A stretch of 63,744 nt of DNA, counting the filler, from Octopus bimaculoides (taxonomy: Eukaryota): NCBI RefSeq assembly GCF_001194135.2. It is 10 parts of 9 records of this genome, joined end to end, with 100 filler letters (N's around TTAATTAATTAA, not from the genome) between each part and the next. Parts side by side here need not be neighbours in the genome. Positions count along the whole stretch, not along the records: positions 46,371 to 59,814 come from NC_068994.1; 9 more parts are not named here. One strand, given 5' to 3'. Numbering within the stretch: the stretch's first letter is position 1; each line of letters begins with the position of its first letter. Positions 46,371-59,109 of this stretch are shown piece by piece. Position numbers and translations under genes: made by a program. Under the pieces are notes generated by a model, which saw only the letters and a program-made list of their open reading frames with translations, ran no database searches and had not been told where the DNA came from.

Positions 46371-46407
<37 letters not shown>

Positions 46408-46444
46408 GTATATGTATGTGTATATATATATATATATGTGTGTA

Positions 46445-46478
<34 letters not shown>

Positions 46479-46487
46479 CATATATAA

Positions 46488-46679
46488 AATGAGTAGTACC
46501 TGTATTTCAAAGGGCCGGCCTTGTCACGCTATGTGTCATGCTGAGTCTCCCTGAGAACTACGTTAAGGGTACACGTGTCTGTGGATTACTCAGCCACTTG
46601 CACATTAATTTCATGAGCAGGCTGTTCCATTCATCGTATCAGTTGGGACCCTCGTTATTGTAACCAACGGAGTGCTCCT
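46488..46679 (+). mobile_element. SINE family C' 3' half
   Basis: Near-identical to 16310-16500. Confidence 0.85.
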
Positions 46680-47391
46680 TATATATATATATATATNNNN
46701 NNNNNNNNNNNNNNNNNNNNNNNNNNNNNNNNNNNNNNNNNNNNNNNNNNNNNNNNNNNNNNNNNNNNNNNNNNNNNNNNNNNNNNNNNNNNNNNNNNNN
46801 NNNNNNNNNNNNAAAGTCTTTCATGAACCATAGGCCTGTTTCCAGGATTCTGTGGGGCATATATCTCTCCACTGGATGGATTGCTGTCATAGTAATACTC
46901 ATTTTTTTCCAGCTGGGTGGCTAAAGCAATGTGAAATAAAGGCGTTTTGTACAAGAACACAATGCATCCCCCATTCCAGGAATCGAAACCATGAAATAAC
47001 AATCATGTGTCCAACACCCTAAATACTAAATCACACACCTTCACACACAGAAGCAGACAAACAGATAGATAGATAGATATGCACACATATGACGGGATTC
47101 TTTCAGTTTCCCTCTATCAAATCCACCTGCAAGACTTTAGTCATCCCAGGGATATAGTAAAAAGCTACCACACAATGAGACTGAACTTAAAACCTTGTGG
47201 TTTGGAAGTAAACTTCTTTACCACATGGCCATGTGGTTAAGAAATTTACTTCCCAACTCACCAAAGACATAATGTGAATTATGTCTTTGGTGAGTTAAGA
47301 TGAGATTCCTGAATGACAATGTAACCTTTATATATTTAAGGTATTTTCGGTCTGATGAATAGCTAGCTGAGTACCCCTCATTAAGTAATTA

Positions 47392-47412
47392 TTACTTCAG
47401 AGGATCTGCTAT
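47392..47412 (-). CDS. Candidate terminal micro-exon IADPLK*
   Basis: Acceptor ATATGTTTCTTAG| followed in phase 0 by ATA GCA GAT CCT CTG AAG TAA; nearest compatible acceptor noticed, 394 nt below the exon D donor; could be chance. Confidence 0.3.
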   Translation of the reverse strand: MADPLK

Positions 47413-47489
47413 CTAAGAAACATATATAACCTGGATTTTACCTGCTTTACTCCCTCAATTTGGATGTGTGTGCGTGTGTGTGTGCGTGT

Positions 47490-47730
47490 GCGTGCGTGTG
47501 AGCGTGCGCATGCAATAAGAAGTTTCCCAGCACCTTGGGCAACAGTCTTCTACTATAGCCTTGGGCTGATCAAAGTCTTCTGAATAGATTCAGTAGGTGA
47601 AAACTGAAAGAAGCCTATCATGTGTGTGTGTGTGTGTGTTTGTCCCCCACAACTGCTTGACAGCCAATGTTGGTGTATTTATGTCCCTGTAATTTAGCAG
47701 TTCAGCAAAAAGAGAAAAAGAGACCAACAG
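47490..47730 (+). mobile_element. SINE family A, partial
   Basis: GCACCTTGGGCAA...GAAAACTGAAAGAAGCC...TAATTTAGCAGTTCAGCAAAA. Confidence 0.7.
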
Positions 47731-47770
47731 CATATCAAGTGACCACACAGAGAGGCTCTTCCTTCAGCCC

Positions 47771-47805
<35 letters not shown>

Positions 47806-47806
47806 C

Positions 47807-47970
47807 CTTCATTGCAGACAACAATGCCCGTGCCAAGTGAATTTTATATTGGATCTGGGAGATATTCATTCGCAGCTGTTCCACGTTACTAATAACTGAC
47901 TGGTGTAAGTCTTTGGGAAGTTCCTGCAAGGTTTTGTTCATAATAGCAAAATTTTCCTTGCTTTTAGCAA
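47807..47970 (-). CDS. Exon D, resembling C-terminal end of laminin-alpha coiled coil (domain II): (V)AKSKENFAIMNKTLQELPKDLHQSVISNVEQLRMNISQIQYKIHLARALLSAMK
   Basis: Strong poly-T acceptor TTTTCTTTTGCAG|, donor AAG|GTACTA; 164 nt, phase 1 in / phase 0 out. Pattern LxxNISxIxxKIxxARxxxxxMK matches the recalled laminin-alpha domain II terminus (NISEIKELIxQARKQAxSIKV type). Exon is well supported; family call is by eye. Confidence 0.7.
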
Positions 47971-48038
47971 CTGCAAAAGAAAAAAAAAAAAAAAAGAAAA
48001 AAAAAAAAAGAAATTACACATATATATTTATAATAGGT

Positions 48039-48312
48039 GCAGGCGTGGCTGTTGTGATAAGAAGCTTGCTTACCAACTACATAATTCGGGGTTCAGTCCC
48101 AATGTGGAACCTTGTCTTCTACTATATTCTTGGGCTGATCAAAGCCTTATGAATGGATAGTAGATAGAAACTGAAAGAAACCTGTTGTATATGATGTTGT
48201 ATGTGTGTGTGTGTATTTGTGTCTGTGTTTGTCCCTCACTACCAATTGACAACTGGTGTTGGTGTGTTCACATCCCTGTAACTTAGCAGTTTGGCAAAAG
48301 AAACTGATAAGC
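48039..48312 (+). mobile_element. SINE family A
   Basis: Homologous to 50077 copy. Confidence 0.8.
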
Positions 48313-48391
48313 TCAAAGAGTCCTTTCAAACTATCTAACCCATCCAGTATAGAAAACAAAAATTAATGATGATGATATGTATGTAAGTGTT

Positions 48392-48422
<31 letters not shown>

Positions 48423-48519
48423 CTTTGTATGGGTGTGCATATGTGTGTGTATATATACGTATATATGTGTGTGTGTTTATATGTATATATATATTTTTAT
48501 ATGTATATGTGTGTGTGTG

Positions 48520-48563
<44 letters not shown>

Positions 48564-49016
48564 TATATATATAGTCAACAGATGAAATCCGAAGATTCTT
48601 GGTATAGAAAATGCTTAGTAGTGTTCATATGATCCAAACATAGACTCTGATATTTTTATGAGAAACTAACTCCATGGGGTAAAGAGTGGTTATAAGAGGA
48701 ATCTGTTATATCAGTCTCTCACTTTCTCTCCTTCTCTCTCTCGTCTTGTAGCATTGCAACCTCCAACGGTTTTTTTAAATAAGATACGTAGCAATCTTCT
48801 CTACCCACAGTTATCACATTCGGTTAAAATGTCTTACGGTTAAGTTGGATCCTATGTATTTCCCTGAAGAGAAGATTACATCTTTATCAACATCACTTAT
48901 TCCTTTGGAAGAAACCATTTGTAATCTTTGAAACATATGTTGGAAATAAAAGAATTCATTTAACATATGCGTATTACTCTATTTATTAAATTTATATATA
49001 TATATATATATATCTA

Positions 49017-49174
49017 GGAGTGGCTGTGGCAAGTAGCTTGCTTACCAACCACATGGTTCTGGGTTCAATCCTACTGCGTGGCACCTTGGGCAAGAGTCTT
49101 TTACTATAGCGTCGGGTAGACCAAAGCCTTGTGAGTGCATTTGGTAGACAGAAACTGGAAGAAGGCCATCGTAT

Positions 49175-49206
<32 letters not shown>

Positions 49207-49270
49207 CTGTGTTTGTTCCCTCACCATTGCTTGACAACCGATGCTGGTGTGTTTACTTCCCCATAACTTA
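49017..49270 (+). mobile_element. SINE family A
   Basis: Homologous to 50077 copy. Confidence 0.8.
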
Positions 49271-49324
49271 TGTCATCCCTGAAATTTTTGGCCTTGTACC
49301 AAAATTTGAAATCATCATTATTTT

Positions 49325-49690
49325 CAAGGCAGTCAGCTGGCTGAATTGTTAGCACACCAGACAAAATGCTTAGTAGCATTTCATCATTATGTTCTGAGTT
49401 CAAATTCCCCTGAGGTTGATTTTGCCTTTCATACTTTTGGGGTTGATGAAATAAGTACCGGCTGAGCACTGTAATTGATGTAATCAACCTATTCCACCCC
49501 ACTGAAATTGCCAGCCTTGTTCCAAAATTTGAAACCATTATTATGGTTTCTATCAGTTCATCTATGTATTTGGTTCTGTTGGACAGGAATTCAAGAATAT
49601 GGTTTTGCAGAAGAGGCTGCGAGCTGGCAGAATCATTAGCACACTGGATGAAATGCTACATTCTGAGTTCCACCGAGGTTGACTTGGCTA
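49325..49690 (+). mobile_element. Two family B SINEs (49325-49543, 49614-49690) flanking an exon-derived fragment
   Basis: GAGCTGGCAGAATC..TTAGCAC heads. Confidence 0.75.
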
Positions 49691-50076
49691 CTACTACTAC
49701 TAGTAGTAGTAGTAGTAGTAGTAGGAGGAGGAGGAGGAGGCAGTAAAATGACAATAAAACAGCCCCAGATTAAATATTTCAAAACATGTAATTTCATCCA
49801 TCAGCATGCTGAGTTCAATTCTTGCTGTTTCTTCGGCTTTAAATTCCCTCAGGGCAGATTATTATGAGATAGTTGTTATCTACATGGATTGATTTAAACT
49901 GGTTCCCATTTACTAACAAAATTGTGACCGTGTTCTGATGTTAAAAAACAAACATTAAAAATAGCAAAATGAAGAACTGATGTGATAAAAGTATAACATG
50001 AAGAATGGTATAATTTTTTTTTTCCAGTTTTGAAACATGTTTTTAGTTTAAAAAAAAAGATTGTAGATACAGGTGC

Positions 50077-50440
50077 AGGCATAGCAGTGTGGTAAGAAGC
50101 TTGCTTCCTAACTATACAGTTCCGGGTTCAGTCCCACTGCATGACACCTTGGGCAAGTGTCTTCTACAGTAGCCTCAGGCTGACCAAAGCCTTGTGAGTG
50201 GATTTCGTAGACGGAAAGTAAAAGAAGTCCATCATGTGTGTGTGTTTGTTCCTCCATCATTGTTTGACAACCGGTGTTAGCGTGTTTATATCCCTGTAAC
50301 TTAGCAGCTCAGCAAAAGAGACCAATAGAATAAGCACTAGGCTTAAAATTACAAGTTCTGGGGTCAATTTGTTTGACTGAAACCCTTAAAGGTGGTGCCC
50401 CAGCATGGCCGCAGTCAAATGACTGAAACAAGTAAACAAA
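50077..50440 (+). mobile_element. tRNA-derived SINE family A, full length
   Basis: GGCATAGCAGTGTGGTAAGAAGC...GGGTTCAGTCCC head to CAGCATGGCCGCAGTCAAATGACTGAAACAAG tail. Confidence 0.88.
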
Positions 50441-50714
50441 ATGAAAAAAAATAAAAATAAAGAATAAATGTATTTTGAAAATATTGAAAAAATGATGGTG
50501 TGCATATTTATTGTTAATCACATTCAGGTACACTTGAATGTAATTATGCTAACCTTTATTGTATTCCACCTTTTCCCTTTATACAATGTTTATTGATAAC
50601 ACACTCAATACAGTGATGTAAAGAGATACAGAGACATCAGTGTTTTGACAGACAATGGCATCAACACACATCATCTTTAGATGTTTTCTGAAGGTAAAAT
50701 ACAACAGCAATTAG

Positions 50715-50923
50715 CATATTGATTTCAAATTTTGGCAGAAGGCCAGCAAGTTCAGGAAGGGGCTAAGTCGATTGCATTGACCCCAGTGTACAGTGGGAAC
50801 TTATTTGCCTTTCATCCTCAAAAGGATGAAAGGCAAAGTTAACCTTAGCAGAATTTGAGCTCAGAACATGGAGATAGATGAATTGCTGCTAAGCATTTTG
50901 CCCAGCAGGCCAACAGTTCTGCC
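50715..50923 (-). mobile_element. SINE family B abutting the piggyBac MITE
   Basis: GGATGAAAGGCAAAGTTAACC..GAATTTGAGCTCAGAAC. Confidence 0.75.
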
Positions 50924-50927
50924 TTAA

Positions 50928-51149
50928 CCCTTTCGTTATCAACCCGGCTGAAACCGGCTCTGGCACTGTAGTACAAATGTCTTGTTTTTGTAAGTTTTGA
51001 ATTAAAATCTTCCACCAAACCTTAGTCACAATTTATGTTCCTAACACTAGCTGAATGATAACTAAGTTATTTTACTAAATTCTTTGTTAAATTTTAAATT
51101 AATTGAAAGAAACACAGAGCATCTCAAAATAAATACAGTAACGAAAGGG
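50928..51149. mobile_element. piggyBac-type MITE, 222 bp
   Basis: TTAA on both sides (50924-27, 51150-53); 11-bp perfect TIR CCCTTTCGTTA. Confidence 0.88.
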
Positions 51150-51373
51150 TTAACAGCAGTTAGTATATTAATGATTGAATCTGCTGAAATGTGTTAAAAA
51201 TGCATATGCATGCCATCATTTTGATTCTCACCGTATATCATGCTCACGACAATTTTAATATTCAATTGGAGAAAATGTGTAGCATGAAAAATAAAACTGG
51301 GGAAATTTGTCACAAATTATGAAAAATATTTGGAAGTGATTAGTTCAAAAATATTAAAAAAATAGTCAATTAC

Positions 51374-53065
51374 CATCGATTTCAATCTGCTTATTTAATT
51401 TTGTGACAAATTTTATGACAGCATCTTCATCTTCTGCTGTATCTGACTGCAATCTTGCACGTGTTCTATCCCTTCTACGTGGATTTCTTCTTCTCTTCTT
51501 TCTCATCCGCCTTCTCCGCCTGGCATCTCTCTTTCTATTTAAAGATCTCCTGTCTTTGTGAATGCTTTGCAAATCTCTTCTATACCTTTGTAGCTTTTTA
51601 ATTTTCAATTTTAATTTACTCTTTCTTGACTCTTGATCTTCTTTTGTAAATATTCTAGAATGTTTCTGATTCTTTATATTTACTATGTTACCAACATTCT
51701 TGCTATTCTTCTTTTCAAAATCTTCGATTTCCTTGCCTCCTCCTTTTTCTTGTAGCTTTTCATAATATCCATCTTTTCTCTCAGCCACATTTTGCTCATT
51801 TTGAAATTCACTTTCTTCATTTCTATTTAAATCTTCACTTTCACCTTCCTTCAACAATTCTTGAGACTCTATCAAATTCTCCCACAAATCTAACCAATTT
51901 TCTTTCTTGGTGTTTGAACTGCCACCCTTTTCCTTACTTTCTGTCTTGTTCATGTTTTTCCTTCTCGTGTTTTTCCTTTTCTTGCTTTTAGTATCTTTAC
52001 CTTCATTTTTTTCATTACCATTCTTCTTCTTATTGCTCCTATCATCTTTTTTAAGTACCAAAACTTTTTCCCTGTCATTATTTTCATCTTTTGTTGTTTT
52101 TCCTTCAAGTTCAGCTTTATTGGATTTTTTTCTACTTGTTTCTTCACTTATCAATTTTAGGCTTTTGTTCTTTATGACCAGATCTTCAAAGTTCACCAAA
52201 TCTTCCCAAACATCCAACCAATTTTCTTCCTTGCTATCCTTACTACCACCAATCTTATCATTTTCCTTTTCATCTTTTTTATGTTGTTTCTTTCTTTTTA
52301 CCTTTTCATTCTTTACCTCCACCTCCACTTTTTTCTTTACATCACTTTTCCCTTTACTTTCTTTCTTCATTTTCTTCCCTTTTCTATTCTCTCCTTCAAT
52401 CTCATTTTCCTTCTCTCTTACATCACTTTTACCTCTCTTTCTATCTCGTCTATTTCCAATCATTGAATACCCGTTTCTGCCAGAATGTTTATCAGTTTTC
52501 TTCCTGTTTCCTTTACTACCTAAATTCTTCCCATCTCCAAGGCTCACATCACTTTCCGATTCTGTTTTAGTGTTATCTCTTTCCTTCTTTCTCTTTTTAT
52601 TTCTGATGGGAGACACCACATCTACACCACCATCACCATCCACATCCTCATCCTCTTCAGTTGTGTTTTCTTTTGATTTGCGCTTTCCACCTGATGCCCC
52701 AGATCTGTCTCGCTGTTTATCTTTTTTCTTTCCCTTTGATTTCTTCTCTGCTGTCTTCTTTTTCCCAGTCTTATTCTTCACCTTTTTGTCTTTTACTATC
52801 TCCTTCTCTTTTTCTTTCTTCCTCTCTTCCAGGAGCTTTTTTAAATTGTCCTCATCTGCAAGAACTTTCTCTGCCAAATTATTCAAGGCCTCAATTTTAT
52901 TTAGAATAAGTTCAAGCTCAGCAGTGGTTTCTTTCAGTTCAGCTACGTATTTGGTTCTGTTGGACAGGAATTCCAAAATATGGTATTGGATAAAAGTAGT
53001 ACTATTGGCTAACTTTTCAGTTCTGGATAGTTCTGAGGATACTTGAGCCAACTTAGGTTTCAAAT
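51374..53065 (-). CDS. Giant internal exon C (1,692 nt, 564 codons): coiled-coil flanks around a Lys/Arg/Glu/Asp-rich low-complexity insert
   Basis: Corresponds to ORF 51366..53063. Acceptor TTTTATTTCTAG| at 53067-53066; donor GATG|GTAATT at 51373, just before the ORF stop; phase 1-1, length divisible by 3. Confidence 0.85.
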
Positions 53066-53192
53066 CTAGAAATAAAAAATTTTTTTTAAATTAATACAAG
53101 ACATTTTAAATTACTTTTGTTGTTATTGTTAGTATACAATTAAAATTAATTATGTGATTCTGGTGGGAATATATAGGATAAAGCAATCCCAC

Positions 53193-53480
53193 ACCCCAGG
53201 TCATGAATAACCATGGGATTGAACCTAGAAAGTTCCCCTCTGAGGCAGAAGTCTGAGCAAGCTTGTTTGTGGAAGACTAGCAGTCGCCTATGTATACCAG
53301 CCTCCCCTCTCCATGCCACCAATTTTGTCCAAGGGAAAAACAAAGGCTGATACAGCTTGGCACCAGTGACATCACAATTCATTTCTACAGCGGAGTGAAC
53401 CGGAGCAACAAGAAATAAAGTGTTTTGCTCAAGAAGACTGGGAATTGAACTCACAACCTTGTGATTATAAGCCTAATACT
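53193..53480 (-). mobile_element. SINE family D, antisense copy
   Basis: Reverse complement matches 20045-20373 body and tail. Confidence 0.75.
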
Positions 53481-54884
53481 ATAATTAATAATCACAATGT
53501 GCTTCACATTGTTTCAACTTTTGAATGATGTCACCTTAGTGGGCATGTGTGTGTGTGATATAATTTAAAATGAGTAGTGAAGTTGAAAGAAAGAAAGAAA
53601 GAAAGAAAGAAAGAAGAAAGAAAGACAAAAGTAGATAGACAGACAGACAGACAGACAATTTCCAGCAAGTTTTTGGGAGTCAGAAAACCAGGCACTCATA
53701 TATGAAAGTAACAGAGTGGGTGTATTATTTATACATTCTTTTTCTGGAAGGGGGAGACTTGAAGCAGGTAAAGCTATAAATAATAGCATGTAAATATTGG
53801 GTTGTGGATGCCCTTACTGAACCAACCACTTTACAGAGTGTACAGGGTGTCTTGTACATGTCACCAGCACAGGTACCTTTTACGTGTCATATATATATAT
53901 ATATAGGATTAAATGTAAGGATAAGCAAGTTAGGGAAGTCGATATATAAAAAATATTAAATACATTTAAAAATGTACGTAAGTTTACATATAAAAAGGTC
54001 CAACTTCCATCATTAATCTCCTTTGTGTCAACATCTCAAATGTAAAACTTCTTCCCTGACAAAGGAGTTCTGGTATTATCCGATGATGGAATCAATTTAC
54101 AATCATTATTTTAGACCACCAATCCCCCAGAAACAGCTGTTGGGCTCATAAAACTTTTATTCAACTCCTTTAATTCCTGATATCATTTCTATTTTATGTG
54201 AATTGGATCTTTTTATATGTAAACTTATGTACATTTTTTGTGTATCAGCTTGTCTAACTTGCTTATCCTTACATTTACTCCTCTATCTGCTCAAGTTTCA
54301 AGTTTAAACCTCTTGAGCACTANNNNNNNNNNNNNNNNNNNNNNNNNNNNNNNNNNNNNNNNNNNNNNNNNNNNNNNNNNNNNNNNNNNNNNNNNNNNNN
54401 NNNNNNNNNNNNNNNNNNNNNNNNNNNNNNNNNNNNNNNNNNNNNNNNNNNNNNNNNNNNNNNNNNNNNNNNNNNNNNNNNNNNNNNNNNNNNNNNNNNN
54501 NNNNNNNNNNNNNNNNNNNNNNNNNNNNNNNNNNNNNNNNNNNNNNNNNNNNNNNNNNNNNNNNNNNNNNNNNNNNNNNNNNNNNNNNNNNNNNNNNNNN
54601 NNNNNNNNNNNNNNNNNNNNNNNNNNNNNNNNNNNNNNNNNNNNNNNNNNNNNNNNNNNNNNNNNNNNNNNNNNNNNNNNNNNNNNNNNNNNNNNNNNNN
54701 NNNNNNNNNNNNNNNNNNNNNNNNNNNNNNNNNNNNNNNNNNNNNNNNNNNNNNNNNNNNNNNNNNNNNNNNNNNNNNNNNNNNNNNNNNNNNNNNNNNN
54801 NNNNNNNNNNNNNNNNNNNNNNNNNNNNNNNNNNNNNNNNNNNNNNNNNNNNNNNNNNNNATATATATATATATATGTATGTGT

Positions 54885-55095
54885 GTATATGTTTGTGTGT
54901 CTGTGTTTGTCCCCGCCAACATCACTTGACAACCGACGGTGGTGTGTTTACGTCCCCGTAACTTAGCGGTTCGGCAAAAAAGGACCGATAGAATAAGTAC
55001 TAGGCTTACAAAGAATAATCCTGGGGTCGATTTGCTCGACTACAGGTGGTGCTCCAGCATGGCCGAAGTCAAATGACTGAAACAAGTAAAAGAGT
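54885..55095 (+). mobile_element. SINE family A 3' part
   Basis: Matches 25621-25760 and 50250-50440. Confidence 0.85.
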
Positions 55096-55104
55096 ACAGA
55101 GAGT

Positions 55105-55136
<32 letters not shown>

Positions 55137-55138
55137 TT

Positions 55139-55779
55139 ATAGATAATCAGAAAATGGAGAAAACTTCAGATCAACAAACCCATCGATTGGACCACATTTA
55201 TAGCTTATTTTTTAATACAAAGCATGACATAACAAATCTTACAGCCGTTTCTGCATCCGTTGCCAAATGCTGTCTATAAATAATTCCGAAAATAAAATTC
55301 TTCATCTTCATAGGACATTTGAATTAAGGCATGGAGCTTCATCAGAGTAAAAAAACAAGAGCATCCAATATAGACAAAAGGAAGAAGGAAGAGGTAAGAA
55401 AACATGGCCTAGAAAAGAAGTCTAGAAACCGAATATATTAAAAGCATATAATCTACCATCTTGGGGCTATAAGGTCCATAGGTAAACGAGTGAACTAGTT
55501 TCCTTTTCTAGACTACTTGTTCTAGACCACAAGATGCACTTGTTTTTTACTCTGATGAAGCTCCATGCCTTAATTCAAATGTCCAATGAAGATGAAGAAT
55601 TTTATTTTTGCAATTATTTATAAACAGCGTTTGGCAACGGATGTGGAAACAGCTGTAAGATATGTTACATCACCTATTTTGTTATGTCATGCTTTGTATT
55701 AAAAAATAAGCTATAAATGTTGTCCGATCGATGTGTTTGTTGATCTGAGATTTTCTCCATTTTCTGATTATTTGTATTT
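55139..55779. repeat. Long inverted repeat, about 230-bp arms (55139-55366, 55535-55779)
   Basis: Arms roughly 90% identical by eye, with one indel of about 17 bp. Confidence 0.9.
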
Positions 55780-55938
55780 GTTTCCTGATAAAATCCTGTT
55801 TATCTTGTTGTTACCTGCACTCTATGTGCATAGTGTGCCTGCACACCAATGCCTGGTGATAACACGGGTAACAGATACCAATAGTACATATGGATATTTT
55901 ATCCCTTAGTTGGTTATTATAACTGCTAACTCTGCTTA

Positions 55939-55978
<40 letters not shown>

Positions 55979-56284
55979 CGTATGTATGTTTGTATACATA
56001 GACAGATCTGCAAGTGTATTCCTAGTCCTATAAGTAAATCCTAAGTTCACTTAGAAGAATTTTGAAAGAAATTCCTGAGTTTATTAAAAAGACAATTAAC
56101 TATATGCTTTAAAAATATTTAGTTTTGATTTTAAATAAGTATTTTGATAAATCATGTGAGTATTGCTGAAGTTGGCACAAAACTGCTTCAACGCTTGATT
56201 GTTGTGATGAAAGACATTTCAAGGAAGGTATTTTATAAATATTTGTCAGCTCCATGACAGTGAGTGTACATTACACTGAGTATA

Positions 56285-56321
<37 letters not shown>

Positions 56322-56773
56322 CATGCTCGTGCATGTGAGCACGGGTGTGTATATGTATATATACGTTTTTATATGTCCTTGTGAGCCAGTAAACTTTATA
56401 ATTCCCACAATAAAATTGTTTTTTTTTTCAAATTGTGTTTTTCTCTTTCTCTGAGACAGTTTACCTAATCCACTATACCTATATGTGTGTGCATATGTGT
56501 GTACACACAATGTTTTATATCCACTTTCCATGATGGCATAGATTGGTTAGGTTGTCCTGGTAGGAGCCAGCAGGTATCCAAGGTGTACTGCTTACTCAAA
56601 TGGGTTAGTGGACTTTCCTTTTGTTCACATTTCATTTTAGTTTGGCTTCTTTGGCTGCATGCCCTTCCTATTACCAACCACTTTACAGAGTGTACTGAAT
56701 GCTTTTCCTATACACCAGCACTAAAAGTTGTCATATCTTCACCATGATTAAAAGAAACAAAACTTTTATATAC

Positions 56774-56863
56774 CTTGAATGTCTTGCTGGACATTATAGC
56801 AACGTTTCATCACCTTTTTACTCTTGATAGTGGCCTCATCCAGGTAAGCTTCCAGCAGTCTCT
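56774..56863 (-). CDS. Internal exon B of same gene ((K)RLLEAYLDEATIKSKKVMKRCYNVQQDIQ)
   Basis: Acceptor TTTGTACTTCACAG|, donor AAG|GTATAT; 90 nt, phase 1-1, heptad-like spacing of hydrophobic residues; joins exon A and exon C in frame. Confidence 0.75.
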
Positions 56864-57959
56864 CTGTGAAGTACAAATATATCTTACAAACCTATATATA
56901 CTTATAAACACAAAGGTATATAGAAATAGTATACAAGAATATGCTACAAACTTGAGGTTAGTTCAAATATTTTTGTGACATGATTTAACATCTAAAGGTA
57001 ATTTCACTGTAGTTTATCATGGAAAAAAATTCTCACTTATGGTAAAGATGCAAATACACCATTTTTAGCGCACTGATACTATTTCTTTGACCCTAGAAGC
57101 ATTTTCAGCTCATTATGCCTTCCTGAAAGAGATAACTCTGAGCTGATTGGAAAGTCATGGCTCAGCAATTGAAACTAGTGACTGATTTGTGCTTGTTGAC
57201 CACTCAATTAGAACAAATATACGAATAAACACAAGCAGAGAACAACAATACTTACACAAACACAAACATGCGCGCATGCACACACACACACACACACACA
57301 CACATGTAGATATACAGATATAGATAGATAGACAAACAGACAGATGGATAGACAAACAGATAGACAGATACACAGATAAAGAGATAGACAGATAGATAGA
57401 TAGACAGACAGATAGACGAACAAACAAATAAATGGATATATAAATGTATGAATGTCCATCTGTATATACATATGTTTACAAATTACTCTTTTAATCCTTT
57501 AGATAACAAAAGAATAATAGCAGTGATAAATTTAATTATTTTTATCCTTTATATGAGTTTCAATGGTACAATATTATAAGCACCATTTCTTCTGAAAGTA
57601 AACAATGCAATAATAATTATGGAGAGTGTTTATACATCAACAAGTACTATAAAGATAATACAGACATTGTCTATTTCAAAGACACTATAGTGGTTGTATT
57701 GTGTTAGTAACAGAACATATGGAGTTGTAAATAAATAGTTATATGTCATGCTCTGCAGAAGGAGGGAAGGGGAACAGCCAGCTTGCTGGCCAGACAGATG
57801 GACAAATGCAGATATAATCTATTATAATTTAAGTATTATTGTGCCTCTACAGGACGTCACAAACAACTATGTATTTAGTGTGTGTGTGCATGCATACATG
57901 CATGTATGCAAGTATGTATGTATGTTTTGTTAGAGTGACAAATACTGCATTATCTATCT

Positions 57960-58240
57960 TGAAAGGACCTCTCATATAGACACGTGGTGCATAGAAGTAC
58001 TCATATCAATATCACTGCCAGGCGAGAACCATCTGCTATAGCTGCTGGAAACTGCCAGGTAACATGATTTCAACCTGTTTTGAACTCCTCGATGACAGAC
58101 ATCCAATAGCACACGACAAACAAATCATATGGACATATGGGGCTTTTATGCACCATGTGTCCATACCAGAGGTACTCTCAAGGTAAATAAGGCAGTATTC
58201 AGTGTTCTAACACAACAGCCATATCAGGTCAGGATAAAGA
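57960..58240 (-). mobile_element. Old LINE RT C-terminal fragment
   Basis: Minus LWYGHMV motif, multiple stops. Confidence 0.45.
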
Positions 58241-58326
58241 TTGCCTGCCCACCTGTCCGTCCATCTAACCATCTATGCACCTCAGTTAAAAAATTTGCCT
58301 AACACAACTCCTAAATTTTTACTTAC

Positions 58327-58546
58327 TTGTGTTAAGAGGTATAATTTCATTGCCATCAACAAACTCAAAACCATTTTCATCGACATTTTTGTTATTTGTT
58401 ATCAAGTCATCACTGTCATCAGTGCTGCCATCCAAATCACATGTAGTCTCACCATCTCCAGACCCTTCAATTGCGTCTTCACCATTTCGACAGCGCTTCT
58501 TTGCATTGAGAAACCTCAAGATGTTTGTCCATGCTTCATCAAGCTT
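58327..58546 (-). CDS. Internal exon A of laminin-alpha-like coiled-coil gene (KLDEAWTNILRFLNAKKRCRNGEDAIEGSGDGETTCDLDG...EIIPLNT)
   Basis: Pyrimidine-rich acceptor TCATTCTCTTCTATAG| and consensus donor A|GTAAGT; 220 nt open, phase 0 in / phase 1 out; frame-compatible with the next exon. Confidence 0.8.
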
Positions 58547-58679: not shown

Positions 58680-59077
58680 TTGTTGTTGTTGTTGTTGGCA
58701 CTCCGTCGCTTACGACGACGAGGGTTCCAGTTGATCCGATCATCAGAACAGCCTGCTCGTGAAATTAACGTGCAAGTGGCTGAGCACTCCACAGACACGT
58801 GTTCCCTTAATGTAGTTCTCGGGGATATTCAGCGTGACACAGTGTGACAAGGCCGACCCTTTGAATTACAGGCACAACAGAAACACAGAAACAGGAAGAA
58901 AGAGTGAGAGAAAGTTGTGGTGGAAGAGTACAGCAGGGTTCGCCACCATCCCCTGCCGGAGCCTCGTGGAGCTTTAGGTGTTTTCGCTCAATAAACACTC
59001 ACAACGCCGGGTCTGGGAATCGAAACCGCGATCCTATGACCGCGAGTCCGCTGCACTAACCACTGGGCCATTGCGCC
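58680..59077 (-). mobile_element. tRNA-derived SINE (family C), full length with (AAC)n tail
   Basis: Minus head GGCGCAATGGCCCAGTGGTTAG...GTTTCGATTCC; 3' half shared with 16183 copy. Confidence 0.88.
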
Positions 59078-59109
59078 TCCTATAAGTCAAATTATGAACA
59101 TGAAGATAA

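What the first reader, a model, noticed from the sequence alone, without database searches (positions are those of the whole stretch)
47807..58546. Laminin-alpha-like coiled-coil gene carrying a 564-codon polybasic exon inside the coiled coil
Seen: four minus-strand exons with canonical splice sites and matching phases (0-1, 1-1, 1-1, 1-0) give one continuous frame. The ORF track treats 51366..53063 as a standalone ORF, but a donor (G|GTAATT) precedes its stop and joins in frame to exon D. Heptad-like sequence runs through exon B, the first ~75 and last ~20 residues of exon C, and exon D, bracketing ~470 residues of K/R/E/D-rich, helix-breaking sequence. Established: laminin chains trimerise through an essentially continuous coiled coil, with only the short beta-knob as a known insertion. 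Inference: a lineage-specific laminin-like chain with a huge charged loop projecting from the long arm, possibly binding sulfated glycans or condensing matrix.
Basis: partly seen in the sequence, partly recalled or inferred. Interest (0 to 1): 0.85.

Follow-up and report, generated by a model that had tools for sequence, protein, structure and literature searches.

The report
Charged insert in octopus laminin-alpha-like gene
The four exons are real and already form part of an annotated Octopus bimaculoides gene (LOC106879818), a divergent laminin-alpha-like protein whose rod region is interrupted, 78 residues before its first globular domain, by a 459-residue highly charged stretch of unknown function.

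Summary
Four minus-strand exons (58546-58327, 56863-56774, 53065-51374, 47970-47807) have canonical splice sites, phases 0-1/1-1/1-1/1-0 and one open 722-codon frame. They match residues 227-948 of two NCBI models of Octopus bimaculoides LOC106879818: XP_014785011.1 ("laminin subunit alpha-2-like") and XP_052828990.1 ("uncharacterized protein"). The large exon has 0 stops in frame against about 48 expected.

Laminin-alpha kinship is supported downstream, not in the rod:
- Three LG domains follow, and their best solved-structure matches are laminin alpha-2 and alpha-1 LG1-3.
- The last 31 residues before LG1 match the conserved coil/LG1 junction of mouse alpha-1 (shuffle p = 4e-5).
- Pfam Laminin_II stays below threshold and Laminin_I is not detected.

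The 459-residue insert is K/R/E/D-rich (net +60). It sits between heptad-rich flanks and leaves 78 heptad residues next to LG1.

Caveats:
- The model is cut at its 5' end by an assembly gap, lacks part of LG1, and has three LG domains rather than five.
- The gap at 54323-54860 lies in the intron before the large exon and could not be closed.
- Expression, trimer formation, function and lineage-specificity are untested, because no other cephalopod sequence could be reached.

Overall this is a modest curiosity in a gene model that is already annotated.

The parts
58327..58546 (-). Exon A (CDS exon 5 of LOC106879818; residues 227-299 plus one base). It opens with a short heptad segment. A 55-residue acidic G/S/D-rich non-heptad stretch with two Cys follows.
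   Evidence: Acceptor tatAG and donor GTAAGT. Identical to XP_052828990.1. Low heptad score over residues 239-295.
56774..56863 (-). Exon B (CDS exon 6; residues 300-329), 90 nt, phase 1-1, heptad-rich.
   Evidence: Acceptor cacAG and donor GTATAT. Matches the NCBI model. Heptad score 0.69-0.81, with the register continuous into exon C.
54323..54860 (.). Assembly gap (538 N) inside intron B-C. Its high-coordinate side abuts (TA)n and a SINE-like repeat.
   Evidence: N run located. The same gap is present in the public record. Flanks read.
51374..53065 (-). Exon C (CDS exon 7; residues 330-893), 1692 nt = 564 codons, phase 1-1.
   Evidence: 0 in-frame stops against 39 and 80 in the other frames. 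100% identical to residues 331-893 of P0001.
52821..53065 (-). N-terminal heptad flank of exon C (residues 330-411).
   Evidence: AlphaFold helix 3-99 at pLDDT about 90. Heptad score 0.5-0.81. Sub-threshold Laminin_II match, 15.5 bits. Two N-X-S/T sequons.
51444..52820 (-). Charged insert (residues 412-870; 459 aa). K 22%, E 12%, R 10%; 150 K+R against 90 D+E; no Cys.
   Evidence: Composition. Heptad score 0-0.44. Disordered at exon C residues 100-240 and 321-384, with moderate-confidence helices between. 0 stops, and 0 of 2000 shuffles stay open. No Pfam family. No relative among 1.84 billion representative proteins.
52164..52256 (-). First copy of the Trp motif (KIGGSKDSKEENWLDVWEDLVNFEDLV...).
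   Evidence: Predicted helical.
51840..51932 (-). Second copy of the Trp motif (EKGGSSNTKKENWLDLWENLIESQELL...), 108 residues after the first. The two copies hold all four Trp of the insert.
51456..51533 (-). Poly-arginine tract KRDARRRRRMRKKRRRNPRRRDRTRA at the C-terminal edge of the insert. It carries R-x-[KR]-R motifs of the proprotein-convertase type.
   Evidence: Net charge +17 in 30 residues.
51374..51443 (-). C-terminal heptad flank of exon C (residues 871-893).
   Evidence: Heptad score 0.56-0.69. AlphaFold helix 534-562.
47807..47970 (-). Exon D (CDS exon 8; residues 894-948). This is the end of the coiled coil, carrying the laminin-alpha-type junction to LG1 (…NISQIQYKIHLARALLSAMK|V).
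   Evidence: Poly-T acceptor gcAG and donor GTACTA. 10/31 identities with mouse alpha-1 from 5MC9, BLOSUM62 score 35, shuffle p = 4e-5, best of 919 offsets.

Best explanation
Exons A-D are constitutive coding exons 5-8 of Octopus bimaculoides LOC106879818. This is a divergent laminin-alpha-like matrix gene with the layout heptad-rich rod, then LG1-LG3.

The 564-codon exon encodes 82 heptad residues, then a 459-residue low-complexity, mixed-charge but net basic segment, then 23 more heptad residues. The charged segment is largely disordered and contains a few predicted helices.

The insert sits 78 residues (about 11 heptads) before LG1. This leaves intact a module that corresponds to the minimal laminin 'mini-E8' unit, which is about 50 residues of coil plus LG1-3.

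The most likely reading (inferred) is that the C-terminal 78-residue coil plus LG1-3 still acts as the association and receptor-binding end. The insert would then be a tolerated, flexible charged linker or loop that breaks the rod. It probably arose from a purine-rich low-complexity expansion with at least one internal duplication.

Shown: the exon structure, the open frame, the composition, the heptad and disorder pattern, the LG kinship and the junction motif. Inferred: secretion, pairing with beta and gamma chains, looping out, and any polyanion binding.
For: - Exons, splice sites and frame.
- Stop depletion.
- Identical splicing in two NCBI models from different annotation releases that differ elsewhere.
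- Three Laminin_G stretches.
- Top PDB sequence matches are laminin alpha-2 and alpha-1 LG1-3, collinear across LG1-LG2.
- The coil/LG1 junction motif matches mouse alpha-1 with p = 4e-5 and is the best of 919 offsets. [quoted passage not shown]
- Heptad-rich flanks against a non-heptad insert.
- Helix and disorder pattern.
- No internal acceptor with a pyrimidine tract in the 3' part of the exon, which argues against removal of the insert by splicing.
- N-X-S/T sequons lie in the flanks and LG domains, as expected for a secreted glycoprotein.
Against: - The rod itself cannot be shown to be homologous to the laminin coiled coil. Laminin_II scores at most 15.5 bits against a cut-off of 33, sits among unrelated coiled-coil hits, and is placed inconsistently. 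Laminin_I is not detected.
- The model has no signal peptide and no LN or LE domains. It has only three LG domains, and LG1 lacks about 45 N-terminal residues.
- The rod has two more non-heptad interruptions. In-register pairing with standard beta and gamma chains is therefore doubtful.
- No transcript evidence could be examined.
- No orthologue was available, so neither conservation nor selection on the insert is shown.
- A hidden exon in the 54323-54860 gap cannot be excluded.
Confidence: 0.55

Rival explanations
1. The locus is a decaying or neofunctionalised duplicate of a laminin alpha gene that no longer joins beta/gamma trimers. The charged insert and the other interruptions would be neutral low-complexity expansions in a rod that is no longer constrained. 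The protein, if made, would act alone or not at all.
For: - Three separate interruptions of the heptad pattern.
- Laminin_I and Laminin_II are below threshold.
- Only three LG domains, and the last lacks the usual C-terminal Cys.
- NCBI downgraded the name from 'laminin subunit alpha-2-like' to 'uncharacterized protein'.
- No detectable relative of exon C in 1.84 billion representative proteins.
Against: - All 18 CDS exons are open with canonical splice sites.
- A 459-codon A-rich stretch with no stops, against 30 and 67 in the other frames, argues for maintained coding.
- The junction motif and the 78-residue terminal coil are retained.
Confidence: 0.2
2. The insert is present in the gene but absent from the mature protein. 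It would be removed either by alternative splicing within exon C or, more plausibly, by proprotein-convertase cleavage at the multibasic motifs at its C-terminal edge. Cleavage would release a fragment of 78-residue coil plus LG1-3.
For: - R-x-[KR]-R motifs cluster at residues 823-854, just before the C-terminal flank (RYRR, RRRRR, RKKRRR), and the insert has 57 dibasic pairs.
- From general knowledge, not tested here: vertebrate laminin alpha chains are proteolytically processed.
Against: - No internal AG in the 3' part of the exon has more than 50% pyrimidines upstream, so an internal intron is unlikely.
- Cleavage is pure motif inference, and secretion itself is unproven because the N-terminus is missing.
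Confidence: 0.12
3. The joined reading frame is partly a gene-model artefact. Either a cassette exon lies hidden in the 54323-54860 gap, or two neighbouring genes (a basic coiled-coil protein and an LG-domain gene) were fused by the predictor across the gap-ridden 10-kb intron after exon D.
For: - The locus has 25 N runs totalling 12,589 N.
- The two NCBI models disagree on the exon after D.
- LG1 is truncated at its N-terminus, next to a 2378-N gap.
Against: - Exon D, which is spliced in frame to exon C, carries the laminin-alpha coil/LG1 junction motif. It ends exactly where LG1 should begin.
- B and C have matching phases and a constant heptad register across their junction.
- The gap flank is repeat sequence.
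Confidence: 0.08

Closest known systems
Laminin alpha-1 / alpha-2 chains, C-terminal E8 and 'mini-E8' region (PDB 5MC9, 2WJS; PMC5343747)
   Same: - A heptad coil runs directly into tandem LG domains.
- LG1-LG2 align collinearly with alpha-2 and alpha-1 (E 1e-9 and 3e-9).
- The last 31 coil residues match the alpha-1 junction.
- N-glycosylation sequons lie in the coil.
   Different: - A 459-residue charged insert lies 78 residues before LG1, and two more non-heptad stretches lie upstream.
- Three LG domains rather than five.
- Pfam Laminin_I and Laminin_II are not reached.
- The short arm (LN/LE) is not seen, but the 5' end is lost in a gap.
Laminin beta-chain loop (the L-beta 'knob') within the coiled coil
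   Same: A non-helical insertion that interrupts a laminin long-arm heptad sequence.
   Different: From general knowledge, the beta loop is about 30 residues, Cys-rich and lies in beta chains. This insert is 459 residues, Cys-free, highly charged and lies in an alpha-like chain.
[quoted passage not shown]
   Same: Local breaks of heptad regularity in the laminin long arm.
   Different: The described breaks span a few residues, not hundreds.
Truncated laminin alpha chains (alpha-3A, alpha-4)
   Same: Alpha chains that lack part of the canonical architecture.
   Different: From general knowledge, those chains lack parts of the short arm but keep a regular coil and five LG domains. Here the truncation is at the LG end, and the 5' end is unknown.

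Membership tests
Laminin alpha chain | Tandem LG (laminin G-like) domains at the C-terminus | tested here: met
   Pfam Laminin_G_2 at 2.1e-19 and Laminin_G_1 at 4.5e-15, three stretches each, in residues 949-1399 of XP_052828990.1.
Laminin alpha chain | LG domains closest to laminin alpha LG1-3 rather than to other LG proteins, and collinear with them | tested here: met
   The four best PDB sequence matches are laminin alpha-2 (1.1e-9), alpha-1 (2.9e-9), alpha-1 LG4-5 (5e-5) and alpha-5 (5.6e-4). Neurexin reaches 0.24. The alignment spans the end of LG1, the linker and LG2.
Laminin alpha chain | Five LG domains (LG1-5) | tested here: not met
   Three LG stretches, then a stop. No LG-like ORF in the 5 kb between the stop and the next gene, but that stretch contains two N runs.
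Laminin alpha chain | Conserved C-terminal end of the coiled coil running directly into the first strand of LG1 | tested here: met
   VISNVEQLRMNISQIQYKIHLARALLSAMKV against mouse alpha-1 LKTLEENLSRNLSEIKLLISRARKQAASIKV. 10/31 identical, BLOSUM62 score 35, shuffle p = 4e-5, best of 919 offsets. The conservation of this region is stated in PMC5343747.
Laminin alpha chain | Pfam Laminin_I (PF06008) and Laminin_II (PF06009) coiled-coil domains | tested here: inconclusive
   Laminin_II scores 12.4-15.5 bits (E 0.018-0.16) against a cut-off of 33. It sits among unrelated coiled-coil families. Two different segments both map to the first part of the profile. Laminin_I is never listed.
Laminin alpha chain | About 600 residues of essentially uninterrupted heptad repeats | tested here: not met
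   The heptad score collapses over residues 141-196, 239-295 and 407-810. Known laminin breaks are a few residues long.
Laminin alpha chain | N-terminal signal peptide and short arm (LN, LE, L4 domains) | tested here: inconclusive
   Absent from the model. The frame of the first CDS exon is open for 37 codons back to the edge of an N run, so the 5' end is cut by an assembly gap. No Cys-rich ORF in the readable part of the 10 kb upstream.
Laminin alpha chain | Heterotrimer formation with beta and gamma chains | not testable with these tools
   This needs octopus beta and gamma sequences with complex modelling, or biochemistry.

The most novel reading that the evidence does not exclude
LOC106879818 would be an octopod- or cephalopod-specific laminin alpha paralogue reduced to an 'E8-like' adhesive end (terminal coil plus LG1-3). 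It would have acquired a conserved, expressed 459-residue polycationic and polyampholyte disordered module inside the long arm. That module would give the basement membrane a built-in polyanion-binding or matrix-condensing element, with the duplicated ENWLDxWExL helices acting as a specific binding motif.
Probability: 0.15. Interest if true: 0.55.

Novelty: new variant of a known kind. Interest (0 to 1): 0.3.

Why it matters
Laminin long arms are described as about 600-residue triple coiled coils whose known breaks are short (PMC10888245). If an alpha-like chain carries hundreds of charged, mostly disordered residues inside the rod and still assembles, two things follow. The rod would tolerate very large loop-outs. 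The terminal 50-80 residues plus LG1-3 would also be shown to work as an autonomous module, as the mini-E8 work suggests (PMC5343747). If the chain does not assemble, the locus is an example of how a matrix-gene duplicate drifts through low-complexity expansion. Either way the practical value is small until expression and conservation are shown. The gene model already exists in RefSeq.

Tried and rejected
- **Word-indexed protein searches.** The 722-aa spliced product and a 263-aa insert-less construct found nothing. A 940-aa insert-less full-length query found only the gene's own older model. Searches missed that identical protein, so absence of hits from this tool is weak evidence. No other cephalopod sequence was obtained.
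- **Exhaustive HMMER search.** Exon C against 1.84 billion representative proteins gave one hit, the gene itself. Orthologues closer than 50% identity would be hidden behind that representative.
- **PDB search with the coil only.** No laminin was listed. The best hits were BLOC-1 subunit 2 (E = 0.18) and other unrelated proteins.
- **Exact look-ups.** The stand-alone ORF C and XP_014785011.1 are not on record.
- **Structure prediction.** Single-sequence AlphaFold of the C-flank through LG3 failed (mean pLDDT 35.5), so no fold search was run.
- **Missing LG1 N-terminal exon.** A search of the readable intron after exon D gave only two short stop-bounded matches (E 0.3-0.4). They were rejected as chance.
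- **Short-arm and extra LG exons.** No LE-like Cys-rich ORFs in the 10 kb upstream. No LG4-5 exons downstream.
- **Internal duplication of the insert.** The overall alignment is not significant against shuffles (score 132 against 105 ± 12). Only the Trp motif stands out. DNA direct repeats are short and weak.
- **RNA genes.** No tRNA or Rfam family in the piece.
- **Literature.** No paper mentions the locus or its accessions.
- **Rejected idea: a purine-rich intronic sequence open by chance.** Rejected on stop counts.
- **Rejected idea: the antisense 379-aa ORF (51907-53046, +) is a gene.** Rejected as a by-product of the pyrimidine-rich antisense strand.

Full report
**What is in the sequence**

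On the minus strand of the piece there are four exons:
- A: 58546-58327, 220 nt
- B: 56863-56774, 90 nt
- C: 53065-51374, 1692 nt
- D: 47970-47807, 164 nt

The acceptors are tatAG, cacAG, tctAG and (T)n-gcAG. The donors are GTAAGT, GTATAT, GTAATT and GTACTA. The phases are 0-1, 1-1, 1-1 and 1-0, and the spliced frame is 722 codons without a stop.

Exon C is 47% A and 18% T on the coding strand. About 48 stops are expected in 564 codons. The other two frames have 39 and 80, and the coding frame has none. The 459-codon insert alone has 0 stops against 30 and 67, and none of 2000 shuffles stayed open. This is a maintained coding exon, not a purine-rich intron that is open by chance.

**Identity**

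An exhaustive HMMER search of exon C against 1.84 billion representative proteins returned one hit, a 1286-aa protein that is 100% identical over 563 residues. The cluster look-up names it XP_014785011.1, [quoted passage not shown]. A second member is XP_052828990.1, "uncharacterized protein LOC106879818", 1399 aa.

They differ in the exon after D and at the 3' end.

The gene lies on CM046614.1 of GCA_001194135.2. The window piece is the same assembly, 100% identical and with the same N runs. The newer model maps to 18 CDS exons over 64 kb.

The exon is therefore already annotated. Nothing about it was found in the literature.

**The assembly gap**

The gap at 54323-54860 sits in intron B-C, 1913 nt after the donor of B and 1257 nt before the acceptor of C. 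No independent sequence closes it. Four observations favour direct continuity:
- B and C have compatible phases.
- The best heptad register is the same for windows on either side of the B/C junction.
- The readable edge of the gap is (TA)n followed by a SINE-like element. Copies of that element at 85-90% identity occur elsewhere in the locus.
- Both NCBI models join B directly to C.

A symmetric cassette exon hidden in the gap cannot be excluded.

**Is it a laminin alpha chain?**

The evidence is good at the C-terminal end and poor in the rod.

Residues 949-1399 contain three Laminin_G stretches (Pfam 2e-19). In the PDB the four best sequence matches are all laminin alpha chains:
- alpha-2 LG1-3 (2WJS), 1.1e-9
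- alpha-1 mini-E8 (5MC9), 2.9e-9
- alpha-1 LG4-5
- alpha-5

The alignment is collinear through LG1, the linker and LG2. The best non-laminin match, neurexin, is at 0.24.

The last 31 residues of exon D plus the next residue are VISNVEQLRMNISQIQYKIHLARALLSAMKV. They align without gaps to the end of the mouse alpha-1 coil, LKTLEENLSRNLSEIKLLISRARKQAASIKV, a sequence obtained from 5MC9. The alignment has 10 identities and a BLOSUM62 score of 35. The shuffle p-value is 4e-5, and this is the best of all 919 offsets along the octopus rod. [quoted passage not shown]

This ties exon D, and through in-frame splicing exon C, to the LG part of the gene.

Laminin_II reaches at most 15.5 bits (E = 0.018) against a cut-off of 33. 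It sits among unrelated coiled-coil families, and two different segments both map to the start of the profile. Laminin_I never appears.

Other departures from a canonical alpha chain:
- The rod is not continuous. The heptad score also collapses over residues 141-196, a basic patch (RRRKKKR…RSRHRR).
- It collapses again over residues 239-295, the acidic two-Cys part of exon A.
- The model has three LG domains, not five, and nothing LG-like lies between the stop and the next gene.
- LG1 lacks about 45 N-terminal residues, next to a 2378-N run.
- There is no signal peptide or short arm. However, the first CDS exon is open for 37 codons back to the edge of another N run, so the 5' end is simply missing.

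**The insert**

Residues 412-870 are 22% K, 12% E, 10% R, 8.5% N and 7.6% D. There are 150 basic against 90 acidic residues, net +60. The segment has no Cys, two Pro, and 16% hydrophobic residues.

"Polybasic" is a fair description, but acidic blocks alternate with basic ones. The strongest basic block, KRDARRRRRMRKKRRRNPRRRDRTRA, lies at the C-terminal edge and carries R-x-[KR]-R motifs.

Single-sequence AlphaFold gives the following pattern:
- a confident helix for the N-flank (pLDDT about 90)
- disorder for exon C residues 100-240 and 321-384
- helices of moderate confidence between and after those disordered stretches

The segment is therefore not uniformly helix-breaking.

A motif (G)GS..(S/T)K(E/K)ENWLD(V/L)WE(D/N)L occurs twice, 108 residues apart. 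The two copies hold all four Trp of the insert. Otherwise internal duplication is not significant.

The insert matches no Pfam family and no other representative protein. An internal intron is unlikely, because no AG in the 3' part of the exon has a pyrimidine tract upstream.

**How it most likely works**

Shown: an open, canonically spliced exon places a 459-residue charged segment between heptad-rich sequences. It leaves 78 heptad residues attached to LG1.

From the literature: about 50 residues of coil suffice for a stable laminin trimer, and that coil together with LG1-3 forms the minimal integrin-binding fragment (PMC5343747).

Inference: the insert lies just above a retained "mini-E8-like" module. 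It acts as a flexible charged linker or loop that interrupts the rod. Whether the upstream heptad segments still pair with partner chains is doubtful, given the other interruptions.

The rival explanations are a drifting, non-assembling paralogue (0.2), post-translational or splicing removal of the insert (0.12), and a gap-related model artefact (0.08).

**Novelty and verdict**

The gene model already exists, and membership is partial because several defining features are not met or could not be tested.

Nothing here shows expression, conservation, trimer formation or function. Lineage-specificity could not be addressed because no other cephalopod sequence was reachable.

This is an unusual variant of a known kind of protein. 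It is a modest curiosity rather than a high-priority finding.

Noticed in passing
L001 9888-10000 (outside the window; upstream of the annotated start of LOC106879818): The frame of the first annotated CDS exon is open for 37 codons (…EKVYLLKEHTFNQRTRLIDLLDISRQVNYTL-M…) back to the edge of an N run (L001 9291-9887). The RefSeq protein is therefore cut at its 5' end by an assembly gap, and its 'start' Met is probably internal.
   Followed up: partly
L001 35350-45802 (intron after exon D; only window 46371-47806 lies in the piece): LG1 in XP_052828990.1 lacks about 45 N-terminal residues relative to mouse alpha-1 and alpha-2. XP_014785011.1 fills the place with non-LG sequence. A 2378-N run (L001 36783-39160) begins right at the low end of the piece and may hide the exon. 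Only chance-level matches were found in the readable part.
   Followed up: partly
window 47771-47805: A perfect (TAG)11.7 microsatellite, (CTA)n on the coding strand, starts directly after the GTACTA donor of exon D. If the donor were not used, the frame would run on into a poly-Leu tail (ORF 47735-47941).
   Followed up: no
window 51907-53046 (+): A 379-aa antisense ORF rich in S, F and L lies opposite exon C. It is a by-product of the pyrimidine-rich antisense strand, not evidence of a second gene.
   Followed up: partly
window 54861-55136, 58681-59080, 49018-49257, 50070-50249, 46493-46654: Copies of SINE-like interspersed repeats, 85-93% identical to other places in the same 84-kb locus. 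One copy abuts the 54323-54860 gap. No tRNA or Rfam match in the piece.
   Followed up: partly
window 52164-52256 and 51840-51932 (-): A duplicated Trp-containing motif, ENWLD[VL]WE[DN]L, lies inside the otherwise low-complexity insert and is predicted helical. It may be a short functional motif.
   Followed up: partly
window 58327-58546 (-) and L001 21213-21569: Two further non-heptad interruptions lie in the rod upstream of the big insert. One is an acidic G/S/D-rich stretch with two Cys in exon A. The other is a basic patch (RSKWNRRRKKKRNFFKRIRSRHRRD) in the preceding exon.
   Followed up: partly
L001 79312-84357 (-), outside the window: The downstream neighbour on the opposite strand is a WD40 / CFAP43-like gene (precomputed Pfam hits). 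It lies about 5 kb after the stop of LOC106879818.
   Followed up: no
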